Counted from the stretch's first letter, positions 348-48,800 are shown. The stretch: 64,000 bases of DNA from Asterias rubens (GCF_902459465.1 NC_047064.1:3906001-3970000), one strand, 5' to 3'. Notes: generated from the sequence alone by a model not told the origin. A program made the numbers and translations.

Positions 348-3300
348 TTGGAACGGGATATTGAGTCTCTTCTTGACGTCCAATCTGTACTCCTTCATTT
401 CTTCAGGGTTACTTGAATCAGTGACCCGTAATCTTAAGATCTCATACACTCGTCTCACTTGTTTCTGAAACAGGACAAAATATCGAGATTATTGAAAATA
501 GTTCAGTGGATGGGATGTTTATCAACTTACAAACCACAGGGTAAATCTAAAATATAAAGAAAAATTTACTAGAGCGGAACGTTAACCTTCGGATTGAATG
601 TTTGTTAAAATTTTAATAGCAGCATGATTCCTTTTAATCACTCCATGTAGTGACTCACTTTTTAAAGAATGTTTTGCTTTTGGTATGAGAATTTTTTTAT
701 TTTATTCATTACACATCCAACAGCACAACTTAGTGCCAATAGACCGATCCATTAGGCTCCGCCTACGACGCACATGTGAGCAAGAAATAGTGGGGCTCTC
801 CAATGCCTTTCTGCACAACTCTGCCGCGTGCGCCAAGATATGCTCACACATGTCGGACCTTATTTGTCGGACCTTCGTTGCGTTGTGATTGGTTAATACA
901 CAATGGGGCGGAGCTTCGTGGATCGGTCTATTACAGGATGAATAGTAACGAGAAAGTGTTCTTAGATGTGAAAGGAAAACCCCCAATGGGGGAAAACCCA
1001 TGCAATCAAGAAAGGACTGAAAACACAATCTACATGCAAGGCTCCGGTCTGAGGTGGGATTCGAACCAGGGTCCACAGAGGTGAAAGGCAGGCAAAGAAA
1101 ACACTGAGCCAACATAAACCCTCTCTGCTTTATCACATCCAATTCAAGAAAAACACCATTTTACTAACCTGTGAAAATTAAATTTTAAATGGTGGACAGG
1201 CTTTATAAAAAACAATGAACAGGAAGTGTTTTTTTTTTTCATGGAACTTTGAGCACATTCATATTGGGCTAAAAATAGACCCTTATCATGCTGCCTCCAT
1301 CTTGGTTATGTTCCTTGTGTCGCATAACGATAATGAATGCTAATAAGCATTTTGCATTTAGGAACCAGACTATCTTGTTTTTCCAGCCATGGTTTGGTAA
1401 CATTGACATCAATGGGAGAAATTCAAGACAGCTGCACTGTGATCAGGGGTGAGAGTCATTGCTAACGAAAAAGTCTGAAACTTGGATACAAATTCGGATA
1501 CAAATTCAAAGGTATGTTGAAATGAAGCCATTTCTACCGTTTGGTAACCCCTGGGGTTATAGATTCCAAGGAGCTTTTGGAAACAGTATCCAAAGCACTA
1601 GAGAAGTAGACCAATGAGCAGGATTTCTTTATTTGTGGAAACAAATATTGTCTGATTTTCTTCACCAGGCAACATAAAAAGTCTGAACAATCTCATCCCT
1701 GCCTGACAAAGGTCGATCAATTGCGGCAATCAAAACACAAATTTGTGATGTCTTCAGATGATTATTTGCATGGCTTTTACAGTATCTTATGATTAAATTA
1801 TGGGATAGGCTTAGTCCTTCCAGTACCTTGCACAGCTTCAGTTTCTCCAACGCTTGTTTCTCCATTTCTGGTGAGAAACCCTTCCCTAAGTTGGGCGGAG
1901 TGAACGCCGGCAGTTTCTGGCAATTCCTGCAGTCTACGAAATCTCTCAGTCTCACAAAGTTATCAGACGGGTCTTCAACTAAAATGTAAAATGAAAGCGA
2001 TCAGGAGACGATTTCACAAAGAGTTACATGTAGGACTAGTCCTAAGTTAGAACGAGTTGAGATAAGACTAGTCTTAACTCTTTGTGAAATCCATCCCAGA
2101 AGAATTTACCAAATGTGTTGATAAAAATCTAAATTTTTCCGTGCACAGCCACAATCATGGCTACACCTTTTGTTACAAAGACTCCACATGAACAACAGAT
2201 ACATAATGAGTAACTCCTTGTACATCTTGTATTCGACAAACTAAAGCATTTTCTTGTTAACCATTGACACAACGATTGTTGATTGATATATCAGTAACAT
2301 TGAGATAACTGCTACATCGAAAATATATTAGTAAATGGCAGAAGTGCAGAAATTAAGGTCAGGGGTTATATGAGCCAATGTGAACTATAATAAGTTCAAC
2401 AGAATTAAAGAAAGCACACAATCACATTTTGAAAGGTTGGGATGGTACAATGTAAATGATTTATGGCCCAAAACATCCCTTCACTGAATTCACCTATGTA
2501 TCTTCTTGCATATCGACATCAAGATGGACATCAATAGAAATGAACAAAAACTTTTAACCAATGGATAAATGATAAGAAACAATTCAACACTGAAAAACAA
2601 GTTGTGGTGGTGCCTAAACCTTTTCCACCAGAAAATTTTATTGTGGTTTCTGAAGCAAATGACTCAGAAAAGTGAACTTAATCACTACACTAGCTATTAA
2701 GGACCCAATGGAGGGAAGACAAGGAAGGATGTTTCAGTTTTAGATGTGGGAGGAAAACCGCTGAGAATTATTCCAGGGAAAACGCACTACATCGAGACGG
2801 ACATACTGGTTGAAACCCTCAGACAGCCTTGTTTTCCACTCACGAATTGTAATACAACAGAGTCGCAACAACTCCAGGGAGGGTCATGGGAAGGATGAAG
2901 GGAAGATGAGGGTAGGGATGGAGGAGGCAATGGGATGGGTTGGCAGGATGAAGGGTTGGTGGGGAAGCTGCTCCTAACTGAAGATCAATCTCAGAATAAG
3001 GCATCTTTTGTCATCACAGGGTAATACCATTCAGTCCTCGTCCTTATAAACTGCAAATAGGACATTCTTTGAAAAGCTCATTAGATGTAGAGTATATTTT
3101 TAAAGTTCTACAAAAGCTTAGGCGTGTCGTGGCCAAGTGGATAAGAGCACCAAACTCAAGCTCCGGAGACTCTGATCAGCGGGGTGTGGGTTCGAGTCCC
3201 AGACTCTAAACCATTATTGATTCAGCCTTGGATGGGACATAAGCAGTAGGTCCCGTGTCATGTGCAACGCGCGCAAAAGAACCCAGTGCACTTATCTTAA

Positions 3301-18800: not shown

Positions 18801-21800
18801 TTTTCCCGTTATTTTCTCCCGACTCCGATGACCGATTGAGCCTAAATTGTCAGAGGTTTGTTATTTTATATATAAGTTGTGATACACGAAGTGCGGGTCT
18901 TTGGACAATACTGTTTACCGTAAGTGTCCAATGGCTTTAAACAGCCTTATAAAATAGAAATTCTGCTAAGGGAGGCCCTGAAAGTACAAAACGGCTCCTC
19001 ACTAGTCTTACAAAATTGAGCCCTGAGTTGACAAAAAATCTCCCATGTATGTTTTTTTTTATCGACAGCTGTTGGAGCCACTGCTGTGTATCCGATCGAT
19101 CTGGTCAAGACCAGGATGCAGAACCAGCGTGGAGGTTTGGTCGGCGAGTTGATGTACGAGAATAGCTTGGACTGTTTTACTAAAGTCATCAGACACGAAG
19201 GCATCATGGGTCTCTATAGAGGTATGTCACCACCTTGCTTACTGAGTTTTCACCCCTCTCTTCCCCTCCTGCTTAGCGGAAATTTGCCCCAAGCACAGTT
19301 TCTAACAGTTTCAGTTTTTCATAGCAAGGTTGAGAGCAGGGGAACGACTAAGCCATTAAGTTGGTTTAAGTGGGCAGTAATACTTAACTTTTTCCCCAGC
19401 ATTTGGAGCCTTAAGCTCGGTACATACTTCTTTTGAATGCGAATGCGGCAGCATCTCCAATCTTCCCTGTCCTTTATGCAGCCAACTCTGTTGTGGTTTC
19501 TGCCCCAGCATCTCTCCTCAAGACACCAACAAAGCTCAACCTCTGTCTTCCTTAACACCTTCTCTGCAATAAAGAATAGCACAGAGAACTGAGTGGGATA
19601 CTTGTATACCATTAGCGGCAGGAACGTTTTTAAACAATCTTACTTTTTTTATTTTAACAGGGTTACCCCCTCAGCTGGTGGGTGTGGCTCCAGAGAAGGC
19701 CATCAAGCTCACCATGAACGACTTTGTCCGAGATCATATGAGGAATAAAGACGGAAGTATACCATTTTGGGCTGAATGTCTGGCAGGAGGCTGTGTAAGT
19801 GTCTCAAGGGGTTATGAAATAAATTGCCTTTCAAGGGTTTGAGTACATTTTGTAGGACACAAACACAATGTCCACAGATTTTTATTTGAAGATAAAGATG
19901 GCAGAAAGCTTCCCTTAAAATATTACTTGCTATAAAGGTGCCGTAGGTTTTTTAGAATTGAGTCACAAAACAATGTTTGTATCCACGAGACAAACGCTAT
20001 TTTAGCATGTCAAACGTATTTACCAGTACTTATATGAAATACCAATACTGGTTAATACGTTTGTACATGCTAAAATAATGTAAATCTGTGGACATTGTGT
20101 GTTGTGCTTCAAAAAAGTACCCAAACCCCTTTAGAGGCAGGGTATACTTTTAGTAATTGTCAAAGACAAGTATCAAATTTGTTGGTGAAAAATAACCTCT
20201 TGCTCCAAAACTACAATAACATCAAATGTCTACGTCCTTGCGGACTGGTAGGAGGTAAACCTGTTTCAGCCTCAAGGGTAGGTGGCAACAAGCTCCTTAT
20301 GTCAGTTGATTTGAGTCAATAGTCCAAACCCGTTAAGTGTAGCCCAGACCTTGCAGTGGGCTTGTGATATTAAGCAATCTCATGAAAACAAAATGTAATC
20401 AAATTTTTAAAAAAGGCAATTTCTGATAAATTACCTTCGCATTTTTGGAGCTGACAAAACAAAACGTTTCGCTCCATGCCAAATCTGTACTGGTAGTAAT
20501 TTTCTTCAACAAGTTGGCTTATTTCTCGTGGTATGACTTTATTATAATTGAATTTACAGGCTGGTGGATCTCAAGTGATGTTCACCAATCCATTAGAGAT
20601 TGTGAAGATCCGGTTGCAGGTAGCTGGTGAGATTCAGGCGGGACCCAGAGTCAGTGCCATCACCGTCATCAGAGATTTGGGATTCTTTGGTCTGTATAAG
20701 GTAAGAAACATCTTTAGTCTCTTGACGTTGACTAGAGCAAGCTAGTCAAAAAATGATGAGACCCATTAAGATCTCACTCTGCGGCAGTGAAGTTATTAAC
20801 GAGAACTCCCCTCAATCCAACAAGAAAAAAGTAGTAGTCCATGCCGATTTCCTACCTTCCGTCCAGGTAGTAGTTCTTTTTACAAATAAGTAGTCTCCCG
20901 AAATCTGAAATCTACTCCGTGGTAGTATAAAAAAAACAAGACCTCGTCTCCAAGGAGCCAAGTAGATGTACTACCGCAAGCTGAGTATATATTGATACCT
21001 TAACATGCAATGCCTCAAAAACTATAAACATCGTCTGCCTCTTAGTTCTGCTGCTGAATTTCAAAACTTTTCCACAATAGGTTTCCTTCACTGTGAATGG
21101 ATCTTGATAAATTTGGCATGAAAGTAGTATGATGAACGGAAAACTACATTAAATTCATAGTTTGTTATTCATTCCTTTTTTCCAATCTGTTCTGATCTAG
21201 GGTGCCAGAGCGTGTTTTCTTCGAGACATCCCCTTCTCTGCCATCTACTTCCCCGGCTACGCACATCTTAAGAAATTCTTTGCTGACAAGGATGGACACA
21301 ACAGCCCTCTCTCCTTGTTGACTGCTGCCACACTTGCTGGTAAGTTTTTAATTTTTTTTCTTTTTTTCTTTTACGGTGTTGCTGTTGGTTGGTGTTTGAT
21401 TGTTTCTTTCTTTTTGTTGTTTTTGTACGTTTGTTTTGTTTGCTTGTTTAGATGATCTTATCGACAAAAAATACTTGGCAAAGCTCCCCACAAGGGGATA
21501 TAAACGCCAAGCTGGCAACAGCCAATCTTAGTTTATTGTCTATGACTATGATTTGTGCAACGATGAAATGTGATTCACTAACTAGGCGACATACTAATAC
21601 TAGTCATTGTGAAATCAGCGGTTAGCTTGGCCGGATTCAAACCCAGAACCTTTTTTATTGCAAGTCATGCAGTCTGACCACTTGATCACGATGGCATAAA
21701 AGACACACTGGAATAAACAATTTTTAGACATTGAAAATAACATACAACATCATTCTGCCAACACATGTCTCAAATTGTATATTCCGATTACAGACTACTT

Positions 21801-23430
21801 TCCCTGCGCTTCAATAACAGCTCCAGATTTTTGGCAATATCTCGAATACACTACAAATTTGTTAAAACAATCGGATGGTGGTTTCAAAAACCAAAGGTTT
21901 ACCTTGCCTTTAATCTGTTCATGTCTCTGTTTCTCCCCCAAGGCCCTCCTGCCGCTTATCTAGCCACACCAGCTGACGTCATTAAGACCAGGCTACAGGT
22001 TGTTGCCAGGAAGGGACAGCAGACGTACTCCGGAGTCACTGACTGCATCCGTAAGATCTATGCACAGGAAGGCTTTAGAGCGTTCTTCAAGGGTGGGCCA
22101 GGTTAGTCGCATCCAGGCATGGTATTCTGTCTACTCTAGTCTGATTTCCAACACACAAAAAAACAGCAAAATTTTGGTAGAATGGGTTAACGCTTTAGAG
22201 ACCATATTGGTCTCACAAGCGTCTTGTACCAAAATGCCCATGGCAACGGCAAACACGTATACACTGTGTGTTAGCATTGTATGCTCAGTTCTGTGAAAAA
22301 AAATCACAGGCATACTACTCGGATGGGATTCGATCCCACGACCCTTGTAATTCTAGAGCAGTGTCTTACCAACTAGACTACCGAGGTTAGACTGCTAGAG
22401 GCAGTTCGAATCCTATGTTTTAGCCGCAGGTACTGCAAACGATTTAATAGATGTATTAATTATATTAACTTTGGGTTTATTAGCACTGTATGCTTGGTAC
22501 TTTCCCCGAGTTCTGTGAACAAAATCACATGAGTAATATGCCTACGGTACATGTAGGTGTTCTGTTTAATTTTTAATGTATATTGGTCTATATTGTTACA
22601 ATTTTAAATGTTTTTTCCCTGTTTAAATATCCGGGGCCAGCCAGAAAAGCAGGTTGGCTCCGTATGTTTTGTTTTTAATCAGATGTGTCCTGGTTTTTTA
22701 CTAAAAATTAATTGATTTGATAAAAATGTTGTTCTGTTTTTTAGCCCGTGTGTTTAGATCGTCACCGCAATTTGGCGTCACCCTTATGACATATGAGATC
22801 CTGCAGAGAAGTCTCTACATCGACTTTGGAGGACAGTAAGTTTAACAGTGTAGAAGTGTCAAAGGGTGTCACGGCCGAACAGTTTGAGCGTTCAATTCAA
22901 GTTCTGGTTGTTAAATCATCGGGATGTTGGTTAGAATCCCCGGTCATGACACTCTCTTCACTCTCTCATAGCCGTCTTCACCCAGGGGTATAGTGGGTTC
23001 CTTCGAGGGTAGAGGTTAATATTGTGTTTGAAAAAGCCTTCGGAGCACCATGGCAGCCTGGGGCTGTATACTCCCCAGTAAGCTGAGAAAGATCAAAGGA
23101 ATGTTTTATTATTATTATTATTCGCCCAGACCTACCAATCATAATTGTTAAGTTTCCATTATGTAATTTTCTAAATCCACCTGAGTAAAAGCATTGCTTT
23201 CTGAAAAATGAGTCTTATTATTTTTTATGTATTTGTGTTTTTTCCGCAGACGTCCAGAGGGTTCGACGCACAAGGCAAGCACCCATGTAGCAGACCTGCC
23301 TCCTGTCAACCCCGATCATCTTGGAGGACTCCGGCTAGCCGTCGCCACCTTCTCTGGTGTCGAAACCAAGTTTGGCTTGTTCCTACCTAAATTTAGAAAC
23401 CCTGTCGCAGCCGCCGCGCAAAGCAGCTAG
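9837..23430 (+). CDS. SLC25A12: Calcium-binding mitochondrial aspartate/glutamate carrier (aralar/citrin; presumed co-ortholog of SLC25A12 and SLC25A13), ~676 aa, 16 coding exons: 9837(or 9858)-9878, 11367-11423, 12098-12240, 12958-13073, 13283-13422, 14666-14812, 15595-15733, 16932-17025, 17402-17556, 19069-19221, 19661-19794, 20560-20700, 21201-21339, 21943-22101, 22745-22835, 23250-23430
   Basis: The exons join in frame (2031 nt from ATG 9837). N-terminal EF hands ([30 protein letters not shown]) are followed by three carrier signatures ([33 protein letters not shown]), [34 protein letters not shown] and the C-terminal helix [27 protein letters not shown]. Confidence 0.98.
10906..11281 (+). 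mobile_element. MITE family B (~375 bp, TTAA-flanked)
   Basis: TTAAAGCCATTGGACCCTTTCGGT ... ACCGAAAGGGTCCAATGGCTTTAA are perfect inverted ends. Confidence 0.88.
12366..12652 (-). mobile_element. SINE, 5'-truncated
   Basis: Body and tail are nearly identical to 30298-30692. Confidence 0.82.
13477..13658 (+). mobile_element. CAGGCCTG-ended short repeat family; other copies at 40398-40561 (+) and 34365-34445 (-)
   Basis: Shared body gcgattgcctccatgccc..gtcattgccttg.tgcccttg.aa...gtagaaattta...catagggtgccctttaccaaggag. Confidence 0.75.
13754..14010 (+). mobile_element. SINE whose 3' half runs into the 86-bp minisatellite
   Basis: tggccaagcag...ggagtcccgg...gtatccttgagcaagg...ggatggga...aagaaccca...acttatcgtggaagagtaggggtt. 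Confidence 0.8.
13970..14571 (+). repeat. Minisatellite, 7 x 86 bp, in aralar intron 5
   Basis: The unit gtggaagggtaggggttaaccccagtgtttctggttcacatagcaagcacccttgtttacaggtttcctcaggcttgcaagctaca starts at 13970, 14056, 14142, 14228, 14314, 14400 and 14486. Confidence 0.95.
16342..16708 (-). mobile_element. MITE family B copy
   Basis: TTAAAGCCATTATACACTTTCGGT ... ACCGAAAGTGTATAATGGCTTTAA. Confidence 0.88.
17039..17224 (+). repeat. Tandem repeat, about 6 x 30-31 bp, in aralar intron 8
   Basis: The unit is approximately gaccaatcatatcactaaaactgccaagctc, with alternating variants (gccaagctc / gctaagctct). Confidence 0.9.
17808..18167 (+). mobile_element. MITE family A copy (left end replaced by a poly-G run)
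   Basis: Same internal sequence as 34493-34867; ends in accaatagtgtccactgcctttaa. Confidence 0.85.
18565..18940 (-). mobile_element. MITE family B copy
   Basis: TTAAAGCCATTATACACTTTCGG ... CCGTAAGTGTCCAATGGCTTTAA. Confidence 0.88.
20717..20980 (+). mobile_element. Decayed copy of the hammerhead-headed element in aralar intron 12
   Basis: GTCTC-TTGACGT-TGACTA-GAGCAAGC-TAGTC-AAAAAATGAT-GAGAC keeps the same helices I and II but has a mutated core. It is followed by ...gcggcagtg...gtagtagtcc...ctccgtggtagta...caagtagat...taccgcaa, homologous to 29690-29912. Confidence 0.6.
22265..22540 (-). mobile_element. tRNA-like SINE head embedded in a short direct repeat (not a functional tRNA)
   Basis: Minus strand CTCGGTAGTCTAGTTGGTAAGAC...GTGGGATCGAATCCCATCCGAG has D and T arms but no paired anticodon stem. 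Direct repeats ttagca.tgtatgct...gttctgtgaa..aaatcaca occur at 22271 and 22480. Confidence 0.6.
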
Positions 23431-26835: not shown

Positions 26836-26950
26836 GGTTTGCGGTAACACCATGTAATGACTATCTCTAATGAGTTGTGGTGATCCTGAAAAGAACCGTT
26901 GGTTTCAACTCGACGTTTCAATCGGTATGCTCTGATCGTCTTCTGGAAAC
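26836..26950 (-). mobile_element. Decayed hammerhead-headed element (short variant)
   Basis: Minus strand reads CAGAAGA-C-GATC-agagcatacc-GATT-GAAAC-GTC..., ending in acatggtgttaccgcaaacc. The core has a U4->A change. Confidence 0.5.
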
Positions 26951-28818: not shown

Positions 28819-31800
28819 TTAATCTTTCTTCTCTACTTTGGCTGCTTCCTTCTCATTGTACTCGATGAATTGCTTGTCTGTGCCGAAGATCTTGTCCCAG
28901 TAAGTGAAGGTTGATGAATAATTCCCATTGAAGTTCATGTGGTGAAAATCATGGAAGCGGGCACCTGAAGGAGGGTGGATAATTACAAATTAGGTTTTGA
29001 ATTTATAAGGCCATCGACTTTAGAAGGGAATAGAGTCAACTCTCTTTATTACAAGGGCACAATTTCATAGAACTGCGAAGCATACAAATCTGCTTAGCGT
29101 GAAATTTCTTCTTTGATAAAAAAGACAGGAGTACCAACCAAATTTCCACGTGATTTTCAGGATAAGCAAAGAACAGCTGAATACAAGTAAGCAGCAATAT
29201 GCAACAAATGGAAATTTGGTTGGTAATCCTGTTTTTATCGAGGACGAAATTGCATGCAAAGCAAATTTGTGTGCTTAGCAGCTCTATGAAATTGGGCCCA
29301 GGTTGCTGGGACTGGCCAAATTACCTCTTTACAAAAGGAATGTAGTTGCAAGAGGAAATCAGAACAAAGAAACACAAAGCAGAAATGAGATTTCGGAATG
29401 TACTCTTCATAAGCAGAACCCTTAATTTAAGAATTCAAACCATTCAGCCACATTTTCGGACAAATATGTGTAAATTAATTGATGGATGATGCTACCCCAG
29501 CGAATGGGGATACTCCAGGAATAGCCACCCCAGGGCCTGCTCTTGAGTAGGGGTAAGCAAACAAAACCCCTGGGGTATTCTTGAAACATGCAGCCAGAAA
29601 CCTGTGGGATAGGGACCTAAGCATGGACAACGTGAAAGCGCGCCGGGCTAACTCACTTTGGGCTAAAAAAACAGACTATTTTGGTTGCGGTAACACCATG
29701 TTTGTATCTACTTGCCAGGTAGAGTTTGTTCTTAGAGAACTGTCTTTCTTTATTCTACTACCGTGGAGAAGATTTATCGGATGTTCGGGAGACTTCTCAG
29801 TTCTGAAAAAAATGTCCTGCTTTTAATTACTACCCGTGCGGAAGGTATAGAAAATTGGCTGGGACTACTACTTTAGCTTATAGGATCATAATTAACCACA
29901 CTGCCGCGAAGTCAGTCCTTAATTTGGTCTCAACGTTTCGACTAGCTTGCTCTGATAGTCATCGTCAGGAGACAAAGGAAAAGGACTGTGCGTGTATTCC
30001 ACAAGAATAAAAGATGACATTGTGAAAAGGGCTCAAGTCATGTCTCTAAACAAGAGGAACCGAGTACCCACCTCCGTAGAAGGGTAGCAGGTGCAGTGGG
30101 TTGAGGGGGAGGTCGTAGCCACTGTGAACATCAATGGTCTCAAGTAGACGGAATGCCATCCATCCCCATAGAAGCATCAGGTGGTTACAGGTCAGCATGA
30201 TGCCCCACATGAAGCCTAGTCCAAGGACTGCAAAGACACAAACAAAGAATTGTTTTTGTTTAGCATTAGATGTCATTTTTACCATAATCTTTGGCGTAAT
30301 AATAATAATATTGAAGTCTTATATAGCGCACGTACTGTATAACAAGGTATTCAAAGCGCTGAGTATATACAAGCTTTCAGAAAGATAGGTTATTGCAGTG
30401 ATGAATTCTGAGACCCAATTATGTAGCACCTTATAAGGGTTTACAAGGTGCTACGGCGCATTCAGCAGCCACAGCCAGGAACACCGGGACGATCCCCCTG
30501 CGCCTTGAACACCCAGCAGGGTGGCTATGTGTGCATTACAAGTCTTATTATTATTATTATTCTCTTTTCAAAAAGTGCACTGGGTTCTTTTACATGCGCT
30601 ACACAACACATGGGACCAACGGCTTTACGTCCCATCTGAAGGACGAAGCAATGGTTAAGTGTCTTGCTTAAGGACACAAGTGTCACGGCTGGGGATGCCA
30701 AACATGTCGCAACTTCTTTAATTTTAAAACAATTCATGATGAACAAGTTCCTCAACTTTGACCTCATGTTATAAAACACCTTTGATATCTTGTTATCTAA
30801 ATCTAATTAACCATATCAAGTTTCGAGGAGTTTCACGTTTTTTTTCTTTTTGATATTACAAAATTACTTTGTCATGACGTGATGCAGGCTGGTTTTATAA
30901 AGGACCCCTATATAACAGCTTACAAAACCAAATCTGTTGAATTCTCAATAAATACGACCCTCATGAATCAGGGATGTCTCATGATGGCTAAATACCAGGG
31001 TACCCTCATGTTTCTTCATCCTACGCGTTTGATCAACACTCGACAGGAAGTCTCTTTACCCGCCTCAGTGATTTGGCCTTTTCCATCATTCCCTCGATAA
31101 CGGCCCACTTACATAAAAATTCCTTTCACGACGACGACTGATGACATCATGAGCTTCTTTGCATGCGTGTTTATCCACGTATTTTTAGTTGTGTAAGATG
31201 TCCTTATTTAACTTTAAGTTCGGATGTGGTTACGTAAAATGTCCGCCACACCACTTGTTATGAAACAAGCTTAATTTGAATCAAAATTCTTAAGAAAAGG
31301 TTTTTGGGGATTATAGAGCGAATAAATTGTTGGATCTATTGATTGGTTAGAGTCACTTTCCAGTTAATATCTAGTTCTGTTTCCTCTAACCAGGAATTTA
31401 AGCTGCCTGGGCCCAACTTCATAGAGCTGCTAAGCACGAAATTTGCCAAGCATTAAATTTCTTCCTTGATAAAAACAGGATTACCAACCAAATTTCCATT
31501 TGAGGCATATTGCTTTTTACTGGTATTCAGCTGTTGTTGGCGCATCCTGAAAGTCACGTGGAAATTCAGTTGCTAATCCTCTTTCTATCAAGGCAAAAAT
31601 TTCATGCTAAGCAAATTGTTGCGCTTAGCAGCTCTATGAAATTGGGCCTTGTTCACAATATCAAATTTTGTCCCTTGGTGATCATTGGTAGGCATGATAG
31701 GCGACAAGAGTTTTGTTGGGGCAAAAGCATCCCAACTGACTGCCAAGCGACAGCATCGGATCAGGGACACAACTGATGACCAGTTATCATGCAAATTTAT

Positions 31801-45805: not shown

Positions 45806-48800
45806 ATGACGAAGTTGGTGATAGCAGGTAAGTTAAATACCGTAATTTTACACACTTTAGACACATCAGTGAAAATTTAAAGTTTTTATATCGATTAAAT
45901 ATGTATTAGGGCATAGTTGAACTGGTATAATTTGGTCGTCCTGTGTAAAATATCGCCTGAATCATTTGAAAAAGTTGCTAGCCCAATTTCCGGACATTAC
46001 CTTTTTTCACAGTTTTCTGATAGATGAATAAATGGATCTTTTAAATACTACGGCTAAAACTACTTTGATTATTATTGACTTCAGTTTCTTAGTTGGTGAT
46101 GGCCTGCCAAGGTAGTTTCCCCGTAGTTTCATTTATTTAAAATGTTTCATTTGTTAAAAAGTTAAATTAAAGTCATTTTGTTTGGGGTTTGGTGTGTGGC
46201 CGTGTGGGTGATTTGTGGCCTTTTAAATGATTTTTTAAAACTAATTTAATAATATATAGGGAAATAAAGTTTAGAAAATCATAAATGGTCTGATTTCCAT
46301 CTTGTGACTATGGAGTCACAATATTCGTGATGCATATAGATAAATATACTACCCCATGTTTGGAATGACCCCATCATGCTGATCAAATCATGATGTCATT
46401 GACCAGCCAAACTGGGGGAGGGGGGAGTGGGGGAATTTTTGCATAAAACAACCAATGAAATATGCACCCCTCCGTCCGGCCATAGCCTTGCCAAATAATG
46501 ACATTTTAAATCACGTAGAAGGCCTATAGTAATTCATTTTTTTTTTTCATTTTTTTTTTTTACATTTTTTTTATGGGGGCATTAGGGCTGTAGTTTTCTG
46601 TTTGTCAGTTCAGTTATTCTTTAAACAAATATTTTCTCAGTCTCACCTATAATTGTCTCTTTAATTCCCATTCTCAATAGGTCATGCTGATTGCCCCTAC
46701 TATGCCCGGGCTGAACTTCTTGCGGATGATCTGAAGATCAATCTGCCCAGTTTTAGTGTCCACAAAATTGTCAAACATCCAAAAGAATGGGAGGTAAAAA
46801 TTTAGGCTTGGCATTCATGGATTAATATTAAACAGTTTGTAAACTGTTTTTAAATTGGTGAGGTTTGCGGGAGCATCATGTGTGAATTTCTTTTGATTGA
46901 GTAGGTTCTGAAAAGAACCCGTGGTTGACAAGTCAACATTTCAATGAGTATGCTCTGATTTTCTTCAGGAGAATGCTGGACTTTGTTGCTTGATCCTGCT
47001 GAAGACGATCAGAGCATTGTGAATTTGTGATCGTCAAAACTTTGAGTTGTCAACCACTGGTTGTCTTCAGAACCAACACTGCTTTAAAGAGATTTACACA
47101 TGGTGCACCTAGTTATCTTTCCACCATGCAAAGTTTAAAATCCCACTCTTTCAATTGTTTCTATATTACCAAAACATATCAAGTGTCTAAGTTCCAACGA
47201 CCAGATCTTTTTTTTTATCCCAATGTCATGGCTACTGAATGCAAGAATTTCAGAGAGGTTAGTCAACTCAAAAGATGTTAAGATAATTTGTAATTTAATG
47301 ATTTACTGTATTTTTTACAGCCGTGGCTTCAGCAGCTGTGTAAGAAGAATGGCTGGGGCCATCGCAAGTCTCCCATCGTATGGCGAGAGCTCATCGACCG
47401 AGGTGGGAAAGGCGTTCTCATCGGAGGCTCCAATGAATTCCAGGAGTACGCCAGCGGCTACTACGGGATCACATCCAAGCAGATGAGTACCGATATGACC
47501 AAGATTGCCGGCGAGAATATCGAGACTAAACTGCTCGTCGACGCCGAGGAAGAACACGAGAGAAGTCTGAGTAAGCCCCTGCATGTTTGCATCACCAACG
47601 CTGCAAGCCCTGTTGCGTACCACATGCTGCGTGAGATAGCTCAGGGTGACGTGCTCGGCAAGGGCACCGAGGTTTCCATAAAGCTACTGACAGAACCCGA
47701 CTGTATCAAAACAGTTGAGGGTATGAAAATGGAAATGGAGGACTTGGCTTGCCCTCTCCTTCGTAACATCGTACTGACTACGGATGTGAAACATGCCTTC
47801 AAGGATGCGAGTGCCATCATCTTTTTGGATGAGATTGCGCAATCAGAGGATATGGAGAAGGCGGAGTGGCTGAGACAAAATGCTGAGGTGTACACAGAGT
47901 ACGCTAAAGTATTGAACAATACGGCACTACCAGACGTCAAGGTGATTGTGGCCGGCACAGGTCCGCTGAACTTCAACGCTTTCATACTCGGACATTTCAC
48001 CCCTTCCATTCTGAGACAGAATGTCGTAGCCCTAGCACGCCTTGAAGAGAATCATGCTAAGTCGGCCATCGCCAGACGCATCAAGGTCAAAACGGCCGGG
48101 GTCATGAACCTCGTGATCTGGGGCAACATTGGCGGAACAACGCACACCGATCTGAAGAAAGCAAAAGTGCGGGGTTGCGACGGCGCCATTTGGGGTCCGC
48201 CATTTTACTCTAGGCCAGTTGGTGAAATGGTCCATGATGACAAGTGGCTGCAAACGGAATACCTCGAGGGATTGAAGACATATAAGGAAACTATAGAGGG
48301 AGCCCTTAAACACCGCGCAGCATTCTCTGAAGCTCACTCTATCATTAGTCTTCTGACAGACTGGTGGAATGGCTCAAAGGGAGACAACTTGTATTCTCTT
48401 GGTGTCCTGTCTGAAGGTAAATTTTATTTATCTTTTTTTTCCACAAAACACTAATTCACAAAGATGTAGTCTCCACAAATTTTAAACAGGTATACTGGTG
48501 TAACAGCAGTAGCCAGGTGGAAAAATATGAAAAGAGAGAGACAGAAGTGTACAGTACCCGGAAAAACCAATGGATGAAGGATGTCTCCTTTTTCATTTGT
48601 TCATTTGTTGCCTTTTCTGTGTGCTTTTTTCCCTCTCTCTCTTTTCACTTATTTCTGCTTGATTGCTTTTGTTACACCAGTATACATGTTCATGTGTTGT
48701 GTTGCCATTTAGCGTTTGAGAAAGGCTAGAGTCAAAATGTCTGGCCATTTAATATTGTTTTCATGTACATACAATTTGACTTTTTTAGCTGAACATGTAA

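What the first reader, a model, noticed from the sequence alone, without database searches (positions are those of the whole stretch)
29913..29988. Structurally complete minimal hammerhead ribozyme in the sense strand of the last MSMO1 intron
Seen: the minus strand has every core nucleotide (CUGACGA, GAAA, GUU triplet). Helix I GUCUC/GAGAC is extended across an internal loop by CAGUCCUU/AAGGACUG, helix II GACUA/UAGUC carries an 11-nt loop, there is an extra U between A9 and G10.1, and helix III is reduced to the loop-less palindrome ACGU. It sits 84 nt into the intron from the exon 5 donor. Established: loop-less palindromic helix III is the hallmark of minimal type I hammerheads of Penelope-like retroelements, which cleave mainly as dimers; an extra residue after A9 occurs in natural viroid/satellite hammerheads. 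Inference: this is the best-preserved copy in the window, so it is either young or retained. It could cut MSMO1 pre-mRNA in trans-dimer with another copy's transcript. Predicted cut is between plus-strand positions 29932 and 29931.
Basis: partly seen in the sequence, partly recalled or inferred. Interest (0 to 1): 0.75.

Follow-up and report, generated by a model that had tools for sequence, protein, structure and literature searches.

The report
Penelope-type hammerhead in a dead retroposon
The self-cutting RNA motif is really there, but it is the head of one ordinary, decaying copy of a short jumping element present thousands of times in this (probably sea-star) genome. Nothing suggests it acts on the host gene.

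Summary
Window 29927-29973 (minus strand) has a complete minimal type I hammerhead: core CUGACGA, GAAA, an extra U after A9, palindromic ACGU in place of helix III, and a GUU cleavage triplet. It lies in the sense strand of the last intron of an MSMO1-like gene.

Rfam finds nothing. It also finds nothing on the hammerheads of this genome's own autonomous Penelope-like elements, so that blank says little. A covariance model trained on other copies hits the motif at 47 bits.

The motif is not a gene-specific device. It is the first 47 nt of a 297-nt copy (29677-29973) of a non-coding retroposon with at least 3,000 candidate copies. The family shows:
- target-site duplications;
- 5' truncations;
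- two classes of 3' end (with or without a "tail" of about 35-40 nt);
- abutting inverted or tandem partial copies.

These are Penelope-type insertion marks. About one copy in five still has the intact motif pattern, so this one is not special.

The 8-bp extension of helix I is host flank plus a private A>G change, so it is most likely chance. The monomer is predicted to misfold, no partner hammerhead lies in the gene, and the intron is spliced normally.

The kind is known, and this scan has already reported such elements elsewhere in this genome. Low interest.

The parts
29927..29973 (-). Minimal type I hammerhead motif. Helix I 29973-69 pairs with 29931-27; core C3-A9 29968-62; extra U 29961; helix II hairpin 29960-40; G12-A15.1 29939-36; palindrome ACGU 29936-33; U17 at 29932; predicted cut between 29932 and 29931.
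   Evidence: Sequence. Custom covariance model, 47.4 bits, E 7e-11. Descriptor finds 1 hit against 0.057 expected. No Rfam hit.
29677..29973 (-). One copy of a short non-coding retroposon (full length about 330-345 nt) that starts with the hammerhead. This copy is the short-3'-end form: no tail and no promoter extension. It is 93% identical to the 48-copy consensus.
   Evidence: Own-genome searches give 2,356 and 3,053 first-look candidates. Copy boundaries. Consensus comparison.
29945..29955 (-). Helix II loop, with a 3-nt insertion (AUC, 29956-29954, running from the last helix II pair into the loop) relative to the main family form. In the main form helix II is 6 bp with a 6-nt loop. The insertion is shared in position with two other copies.
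   Evidence: Alignments. 'Left out 3' at 29953 in many contigs of other copies.
29981..29988 (-). CAGUCCUU, the 5' arm of the apparent helix I extension. It is host intron sequence outside the repeat.
   Evidence: The repeat boundary is at 29973-29975 in 19 of 20 comparisons. Upstream flanks of other copies are unrelated.
29913..29920 (-). AAGGACUG, the 3' arm of the apparent extension, inside the repeat. The family consensus has A where this copy has G (29917).
   Evidence: Other copies read T on the plus strand at 29917 (table 3).
29798..29814 (-). Remnant of the family's conserved internal hairpin (7-bp stem, UUUC loop, apex like a histone stem-loop). In this copy it is broken by a 1-nt deletion and a C>U change.
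   Evidence: Consensus compared with window. Comparison with histone-type stem-loops in sister families.
28965..30071 (-). Last intron (1,107 nt, GT..AG) of the MSMO1-like gene (FA_hydroxylase family). It contains the retroposon in sense orientation.
   Evidence: The splice joint is seen in contigs of three runs. Donor and acceptor read. Flanking exons match Pfam PF04116. ORFs.
20716..21026 (+). Older copy of the same family (69% identical to the consensus). Its hammerhead core is dead (C3>U without compensation, A9>U, G12>A).
26907..26950 (-). Degraded hammerhead of a related family (core CAGAAGA, so U4 is mutated).
   Evidence: Custom model, 32.8 bits.
46904..46973 (-). Degraded hammerhead of a sister family, followed by a histone-type stem-loop (stem-loop starts at 46919).

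Best explanation
The motif is the 5'-terminal ribozyme module of a short, non-coding retroposon that is copied by Penelope-like elements (PLEs). One copy inserted in sense orientation into the last intron of an MSMO1-like gene and has been decaying there as a passenger.

Shown:
- The hammerhead fits the PLE minimal type in every published feature.
- It is the first 47 nt of a 297-nt repeat copy.
- The family has thousands of copies with target-site duplications, 5' truncations, two classes of 3' end and abutting inverted or tandem partial copies.
- The genome holds many intact PLE genes (reverse transcriptase plus C-terminal GIY-YIG nuclease), and their own tails carry hammerheads of the same design.

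Inferred:
- Master copies are transcribed from an upstream CCAAT/TATA promoter, starting at the first base of helix I.
- The PLE protein copies mostly uncleaved RNA by target-primed reverse transcription, starting at either of two internal sites.
- The ribozyme can cut only when two copies pair through the ACGU palindrome, or with help from the PLE protein.
- In the MSMO1 pre-mRNA it stands alone, folds into an inactive rod and is removed with the intron.
For: Motif and coordinates.

Family membership and boundaries.

Copy counts: 618 intact-pattern copies against 0 in the control, and at least 3,053 candidates.

In 29 copies picked by the non-ribozyme body:
- 20 start at helix I and 9 are 5'-truncated;
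- 3' ends cluster at about 298-306 or about 327-344;
- about 7 have abutting inverted or tandem partial copies.

Target-site duplications of 8-13 bp occur in 10 of 38 full-length copies, against 1.6% of shuffled flank pairs.

PLE genes: 149 GIY-YIG hits, many with intact 921- or 931-codon frames, carrying RVT_1 plus GIY-YIG.

Their tails carry min-HHRs with different helices but the same design. Across families 93% of cells pair, against 72% in shuffles, and 10 of 13 pairs change on both sides.

Custom covariance model: 47.4 bits on the window motif.

Decay of this copy: 93% identical to the consensus, and its internal hairpin is broken. In the body-selected sample only about 2 of 20 full-length copies keep an intact ribozyme.

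The monomer's lowest-energy fold pairs the core with the cleavage site. The ribozyme-competent fold is 4.6 kcal/mol worse.

Normal splicing.

Literature:
- PMC4209133: features of the type; monomers inactive, dimers weak.
- PMC8557442: tails and inverted copies as PLE marks.
- PMC11167929: two internal start sites for reverse transcription; the ribozyme is protein-assisted and not needed for insertion in vitro.
- bioRxiv 10.64898/2026.07.22.740005: animal retrozymes are non-autonomous PLE derivatives; monomers are dispersed and about 44% overlap introns in Xenopus.
Against: - No autonomous PLE with sequence homology to this retroposon was found. The two young PLE families share no sequence with it, so the partner is inferred from insertion marks only.
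- Cleavage was not measured. All RNA data were assembled contigs, which cannot show RNA ends.
- The sequences used for the covariation count were picked by a descriptor that demands pairing, which inflates the percentage paired.
- Zero substitutions in the 47-nt ribozyme, against about 2.6 expected, is mildly low (P about 0.07). Weak retention cannot be excluded.
Confidence: 0.88

Rival explanations
1. Exapted intronic ribozyme. The intact sense-strand hammerhead is kept by selection and cuts MSMO1 pre-mRNA, lowering or timing expression. It would do so as a trans-dimer with other family transcripts or with PLE protein help.
For: The core is fully intact, with no substitution in 47 nt. It lies in sense orientation. 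Intact PLE genes exist that could supply an assisting protein (PMC11167929). Hundreds of intact copies could supply dimer partners.
Against: About 1 in 5 family candidates keeps the intact pattern, so no selection is needed. The rest of the copy decays, and a 3-nt insertion weakens helix II. The helix I extension is flank plus a private mutation. No cis partner lies in the gene. The monomer is predicted to misfold. Published min-HHRs are inactive as monomers and weak as dimers (PMC4209133). Spliced mRNA is normal in three runs.
Confidence: 0.04
2. Retrozyme locus. The copy is a unit of a tandem hammerhead repeat that is transcribed, cut at both ends and circularised into a small circRNA.
For: The unit length (about 330 nt) and the type I hammerhead resemble animal non-LTR retrozymes (PMC7229834). 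Tandem hammerhead arrays from this family exist elsewhere, for example 7 x 67 nt on contig 13.
Against: The window copy is a single monomer with one ribozyme, so double cleavage is impossible. The ribozyme is the minimal type without loop-loop contacts. Most copies begin 47 nt upstream of the cleavage site, so uncleaved linear RNA was the template. The contig-13 array carries G8>A and a broken palindrome.
Confidence: 0.04
3. Chance look-alike. The core boxes and stems arose by accident in intron sequence.
For: Rfam reports no hammerhead, even at E up to 10. Relaxed descriptors do give occasional random hits (16 of 300 shuffles).
Against: The same 47 nt recur hundreds of times in the genome (618 pattern matches), with 0 in the reversed control. 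The independent model gives E 7e-11. Helices covary between families. Rfam also misses the PLEs' own hammerheads.
Confidence: 0.01

Closest known systems
Minimal hammerheads of metazoan Penelope-like elements (Cervera & De la Pena 2014, PMC4209133; Lunse et al. 2017, known to me by title only and not read here)
   Same: Type I topology. Unpaired nucleotide between A9 and G10.1. G10.1-C11.1 pair. Helix II of 6-7 bp in the family (5 bp plus a mismatch here). Helix I of 5 bp. Helix III reduced to the palindrome ACGU. Thousands of dispersed single copies grouped in consensus families.
   Different: Here the motif heads a short non-coding element, not the tail repeat of a coding PLE. No homologous coding parent was found in this genome.
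Animal non-LTR retrozymes (Cervera & De la Pena 2020, PMC7229834; Li et al. 2026 preprint, 10.64898/2026.07.22.740005)
   Same: Non-autonomous units of about 300 nt with a type I hammerhead that co-occur with PLEs. Dispersed monomers are common and often intronic.
   Different: Retrozymes are defined by tandem arrays, canonical hammerheads with loop 1-loop 2 contacts, and circRNA products. This family is mostly single copies with a minimal hammerhead, and its copies start upstream of the cut site.
Sm-alpha SINE-like hammerhead elements of Schistosoma (Ferbeyre et al. 1998, as cited in PMC4209133)
   Same: A short retroposon of about 330 nt, in high copy number, with a hammerhead in its 5' part.
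   Different: Sm-alpha carries a canonical, efficient hammerhead. It is in a different phylum and shares no sequence.
Conserved intronic hammerheads of amniotes (HH9/HH10; De la Pena & Garcia-Robles 2010, as cited in PMC4209133 and PMC7229834)
   Same: A sense-strand hammerhead inside an intron of a protein-coding gene.
   Different: Those are single-copy, deeply conserved, have a stable helix III and are found by Rfam models. This one is 1 of thousands of repeat copies, has no stable helix III and gets no Rfam hit.

Membership tests
Hammerhead ribozyme, type I | Conserved core: C3 U4 G5 A6 N7 G8 A9, G12 A13 A14, A15.1-U16.1, and H17 not G | tested here: met
   CUGACGA at 29968-62, GAAA at 29939-36, U16.1 at 29933, U17 at 29932.
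Hammerhead ribozyme, type I | Helices I and II flank the core, and helix I is open-ended | tested here: met
   Helix I is 5 bp. Helix II is 5 bp, then a U-C mismatch, then a C-G pair.
Hammerhead ribozyme, type I | Self-cleavage after H17 | not testable with these tools
   Only assembled contigs were available, so RNA ends cannot be seen.
Rfam hammerhead families (those included in the Rfam release 15 scan) | Score at or above the gathering threshold | tested here: not met
   No hit even at E up to 10. The PLEs' own hammerheads also get no hit, so these models do not cover the minimal type.
PLE minimal hammerhead (PMC4209133) | [quoted passage not shown] | tested here: met
   U at 29961. The position is filled family-wide (U or C) and is A in the PLE tails.
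PLE minimal hammerhead (PMC4209133) | G10.1-C11.1 pair, long helix II (6-8 bp) and short helix I (4-5 bp) | tested here: met
   G-C in 19 of 20 aligned sequences. Family helix II is 6-7 bp and helix I is 5 bp. The window copy has helix II weakened by a 3-nt insertion.
PLE minimal hammerhead (PMC4209133) | Palindromic 15.x-16.x positions in place of a closed helix III | tested here: met
   ACGU here. AGCU in the 921-codon PLE. The inner pair changes C-G to G-C.
PLE minimal hammerhead (PMC4209133) | Consensus families with compensatory changes within one genome | tested here: met
   10 of 13 pairs change on both sides. 93% of cells pair, against 72% in shuffles and 14-37% when the partner is slid. 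Caveat: the sequences were picked by a pairing descriptor.
PLE minimal hammerhead (PMC4209133) | Located in the terminal repeat of a PLE, or derived from one | tested here: inconclusive
   Autonomous PLEs of this genome carry such motifs about 75 nt from their 3' ends. None shares sequence with this retroposon.
PLE-mobilised non-autonomous retroposon | Insertion marks of PLEs: optional 30-40-nt tail, abutting inverted or tandem partial copies, 5' truncation, target-site duplication | tested here: met
   The criteria come from PMC8557442 and PMC11167929. The window copy itself shows none of these extras and no clear duplication.
Non-LTR retrozyme | Tandem units, each with a canonical hammerhead, giving unit-length circRNA | tested here: not met
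   The window copy is a lone monomer. The ribozyme is the minimal type. circRNA could not be tested.
Conserved functional intronic hammerhead (HH9/HH10-like) | Single-copy and conserved at the orthologous site across species | tested here: not met
   There are thousands of copies. Orthologous introns of named relatives were not available. Contigs under two organism codes bridge the 3' junction, but the relation between those organisms is unknown.

The most novel reading that the evidence does not exclude
Intact sense-strand copies such as this one might be cleaved in vivo, because this genome expresses intact Penelope proteins that can assist such ribozymes and hundreds of partner transcripts that can dimerise through ACGU. 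Retroposon hammerheads would then act as dispersed, conditional pre-mRNA cutters that tie host gene output (here sterol synthesis) to transposon activity.
Probability: 0.03. Interest if true: 0.6.

Novelty: new member of a known kind. Interest (0 to 1): 0.2.

Why it matters
For the gene it matters little: an intronic repeat copy with a ribozyme motif that most likely does nothing there.

For the family there is modest value. This genome offers a clean, high-copy example of a hammerhead-headed, Penelope-dependent short retroposon, with three useful properties:
- Most copies begin at a probable transcription start and include the whole ribozyme, which suggests that uncleaved RNA is the usual template.
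- The two classes of 3' end match the two internal start sites for reverse transcription reported for a lizard PLE.
- Rfam's hammerhead models miss this whole class, so genome annotations under-report it.

Tried and rejected
- Rfam scans of the window, the locus and four related loci gave no hammerhead hit. This says nothing about this class.
- I looked for a coding parent. Two same-strand motif pairs, 1.9 kb and 6.5 kb apart, turned out to be segmental duplications without long ORFs. The 921- and 931-codon PLE families share no sequence with the retroposon. A weak 50-nt match upstream of one PLE copy is absent from other copies of that PLE.
- I asked whether the window's upstream flank is the family's promoter extension. 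Similarity is only about 50-58%, against 93% for the body, so I rejected this.
- I asked whether that flank is an inverted fragment of the element. Only the 8-mer matches.
- RNA evidence for cleavage: all runs were assembled contigs, so no ends could be seen. Depth over the repeat is a pile-up of many copies.
- Dimer cofolding gives an extended duplex only 4.5 kcal/mol better than two monomers. This is not informative about the double-hammerhead fold.
- The contig-13 array of 7 x 67-nt hammerhead units, considered as a possible active master, carries G8>A and a broken palindrome.
'Sea star' rests on marine runs, earlier scan notes and my memory of a 417.6-Mb Asterias assembly. It is unverified.

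Full report
**Observation.**
- Helix I: GUCUC (29973-69) pairs with GAGAC (29931-27).
- Core: CUGACGA (29968-62), then an extra U (29961).
- Helix II: GACUA pairs with UAGUC, with an 11-nt loop (29960-40).
- GAAA (29939-36), then the palindrome ACGU (29936-33), then U17 at 29932. The predicted cut lies between 29932 and 29931.
- The outer 8-bp pairing, CAGUCCUU with AAGGACUG, is also present.

**Host gene.** Contigs from three runs join 28961/28964 to 30069/30072. With the canonical GT..AG register the intron is 28965-30071 on the minus strand. The flanking exons match the fatty-acid hydroxylase family that includes MSMO1, and the downstream exon ends in a stop codon. The motif is therefore in the sense strand of the last intron and starts at intron nucleotide 84, as stated.

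**Is it more than chance?**
- Rfam gives no hammerhead hit at gathering thresholds, or at E up to 10 on the local 900 nt.
- That blank is not informative. Rfam also gives no hit on consensus-like copies or on the hammerheads in the tails of this genome's autonomous Penelope-like elements.
- A descriptor written for the minimal type finds 1 motif in the window, against 0.057 per dinucleotide shuffle.
- The family pattern occurs 618 times in the genome and never when read backwards.
- I aligned 20 hammerheads from five families of this genome, none from the window, and built a covariance model. It scores the window motif at 47.4 bits, E about 7e-11.
- The same model finds three degraded relatives in the window, at 26907-26950, 46932-46973 and 20717-20762.
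- On that alignment 93% of cells pair, against 72% in shuffles and 14-37% with slid partners. Ten of 13 pairs change on both sides, including the inner pair of the palindrome (C-G to G-C). One caveat: the sequences were collected with a descriptor that requires pairing.

**What the motif belongs to.** Own-genome searches show that window 29973 down to 29677 is one copy of a dispersed repeat. The first look gave 2,356 candidates with the ribozyme half as query and 3,053 with the body alone. Scored copies are 87-93% identical.
- The repeat boundary falls at the first base of helix I in nearly all comparisons.
- Full-length copies are about 330-345 nt and have no ORF.
- In 29 copies chosen by the non-ribozyme body, 20 start at helix I and 9 are 5'-truncated.
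- Their 3' ends fall in two classes, about 298-306 and about 327-344. That is, with or without a shared tail of about 35-40 nt.
- About 7 of the 29 have an inverted or tandem partial copy abutting them.
- Ten of 38 full-length copies have 8-13-bp direct repeats exactly at their edges, against 1.6% of mismatched flank pairs.

Tails, inverted or tandem partial copies and 5' truncation are the published insertion marks of Penelope-like elements (PMC8557442). Two adjacent internal start sites for reverse transcription have been shown for a lizard PLE (PMC11167929).

**Penelope-like elements in this genome.** The genome is rich in such elements. There are 149 GIY-YIG hits, many with intact 921- or 931-codon frames. 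These encode a reverse transcriptase plus a C-terminal GIY-YIG nuclease, and they sit in the classic partial-tandem and inverted arrangement.

Both PLE families carry a minimal hammerhead about 75 nt from the unit's 3' end. The helices have different sequences, but the design is the same: an extra A after A9, and an AGCU or ACGU palindrome. The 931-codon family has a core variant. I found no coding element that shares sequence with the retroposon. Dependence on PLEs is therefore inferred from the insertion marks, not from a shared end.

**State of the window copy.** It is 93% identical to the 48-copy consensus, with about 16 substitutions in 297 nt.
- The ribozyme has no substitution. It does have a 3-nt insertion that turns the family's 6-7-bp helix II into 5 bp plus a mismatch.
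- Zero substitutions in 47 nt, where about 2.6 are expected, is not significant.
- The family's conserved internal hairpin is broken in this copy.
- The copy lacks both the tail and the promoter extension described below.
- About 20% of candidates (618 of at least 3,053) still match the intact pattern. In the unbiased sample about 2 of 20 full-length copies are fully intact. An intact core in one copy needs no special explanation.

**The helix I extension.** Its 5' arm (29988-81) is host intron outside the repeat. Its 3' arm is perfect only because this copy has G where every other aligned copy has A (29917, and table 3). At insertion the pairing would have been 4+3 bp with a central mismatch. 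I read it as coincidence.

**Could it cut MSMO1 pre-mRNA?**
- There is no second hammerhead within the gene. The nearest same-strand relic lies beyond the last exon and has a mutated core.
- The monomer's lowest-energy fold pairs G5-G8 with the CGUU at the cleavage site. The ribozyme-competent fold is 4.6 kcal/mol less stable.
- Published minimal hammerheads are inactive as monomers and weak as dimers (PMC4209133). The lizard one needs the PLE protein and is dispensable for insertion in vitro (PMC11167929).
- Spliced mRNA contigs are normal in runs under two organism codes.
- Cleavage itself could not be tested, because every available run is held as contigs.

**Family anatomy, beyond the finding.** Six of 38 full-length copies share a 5' extension of at least 60-110 nt. 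It has a CCAAT box near -80, TATAAATA near -30 and an initiator-like TCA|GUCUC at the common 5' end. The usual 5' end of copies is therefore probably a Pol II transcription start.

Because most copies contain the 47 nt upstream of the cut site, uncleaved RNA seems to be the usual template. Sister families in this genome place a faithful histone-type stem-loop right after the hammerhead. My family instead has, about 120 nt downstream, a hairpin that shares the 14-nt apex of that stem-loop.

**Earlier scan notes.** Notes on other DNA of this genome had already reported Penelope-type hammerhead retroposons and the histone stem-loop pairing. I used them as a lead and checked the stem-loop point only partly.

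**Comparison and verdict.** The motif is a member of the known class of Penelope-type minimal hammerheads. The element is a non-autonomous PLE-dependent retroposon, close to but not the same as tandem non-LTR retrozymes (PMC7229834; preprint 10.64898/2026.07.22.740005). That preprint also shows dispersed monomers to be common in introns.

The specific locus is ordinary. The 'young or retained' and pre-mRNA-cutting ideas are not supported.

A sea star is my guess, from marine runs, earlier notes and memory of the genome size.

Noticed in passing
L049, L054, L055, L066, L044 and L004: 60-110 nt upstream of the element start: A minority of family copies carry a shared 5' extension with CCAAT and TATAAATA boxes, placed so that the usual 5' end of copies (the first base of helix I) would be a Pol II start site. 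This would be a promoter-bearing 'master' form of the retroposon.
   Followed up: partly
window about 46904-46973 (-); L054:843-925; L023 (-) near 3159; L008, L045, L060, L064, L065, L067: Sister hammerhead families in this genome are followed within about 10 nt by a faithful histone-mRNA-type stem-loop (GGYYCUUUUCAGRRCC plus an ACC-like flank). My family has only a hairpin with the same 14-nt apex, about 120 nt downstream. Earlier scan notes reported the same pairing.
   Followed up: partly
L021:1610-2078 (G000 contig 13, about 16282110-16282578): An array of 7 x 67-nt units at 99% identity, made from the hammerhead head of this family. Both CpG sites have decayed (G8>A, ACGU>ACAU), so this is a recently amplified but catalytically dead satellite.
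   Followed up: yes
L036:5555-5600 (tail of the 931-codon PLE): The hammerhead in this young, 99.5%-identical PLE family has a non-canonical core (UCGAGAA where CUGANGA is expected): a U3/A8 covariation plus C at position 4. Activity is unknown.
   Followed up: no
window 22316-22387 (-) and L019:2587-2658 (+): Near-identical tRNA-like sequences (Rfam tRNA, 35.7 and 28.1 bits) at unrelated loci. Probably a tRNA-derived SINE family.
   Followed up: no
window 29099-29326 and 30296-30400: Two further high-copy repeats sit in or next to the same intron, seen as huge contig pile-ups with sharp edges near 29299-29305 and 30297. They were not identified.
   Followed up: no
L038-L041 (G000 contigs 1 and 2): A third, very short hammerhead family (about 100-130 nt) with core CUGAGGA, a 7-bp helix II, a 3-nt loop, a GUA triplet and only a 3-5-bp helix I.
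   Followed up: partly
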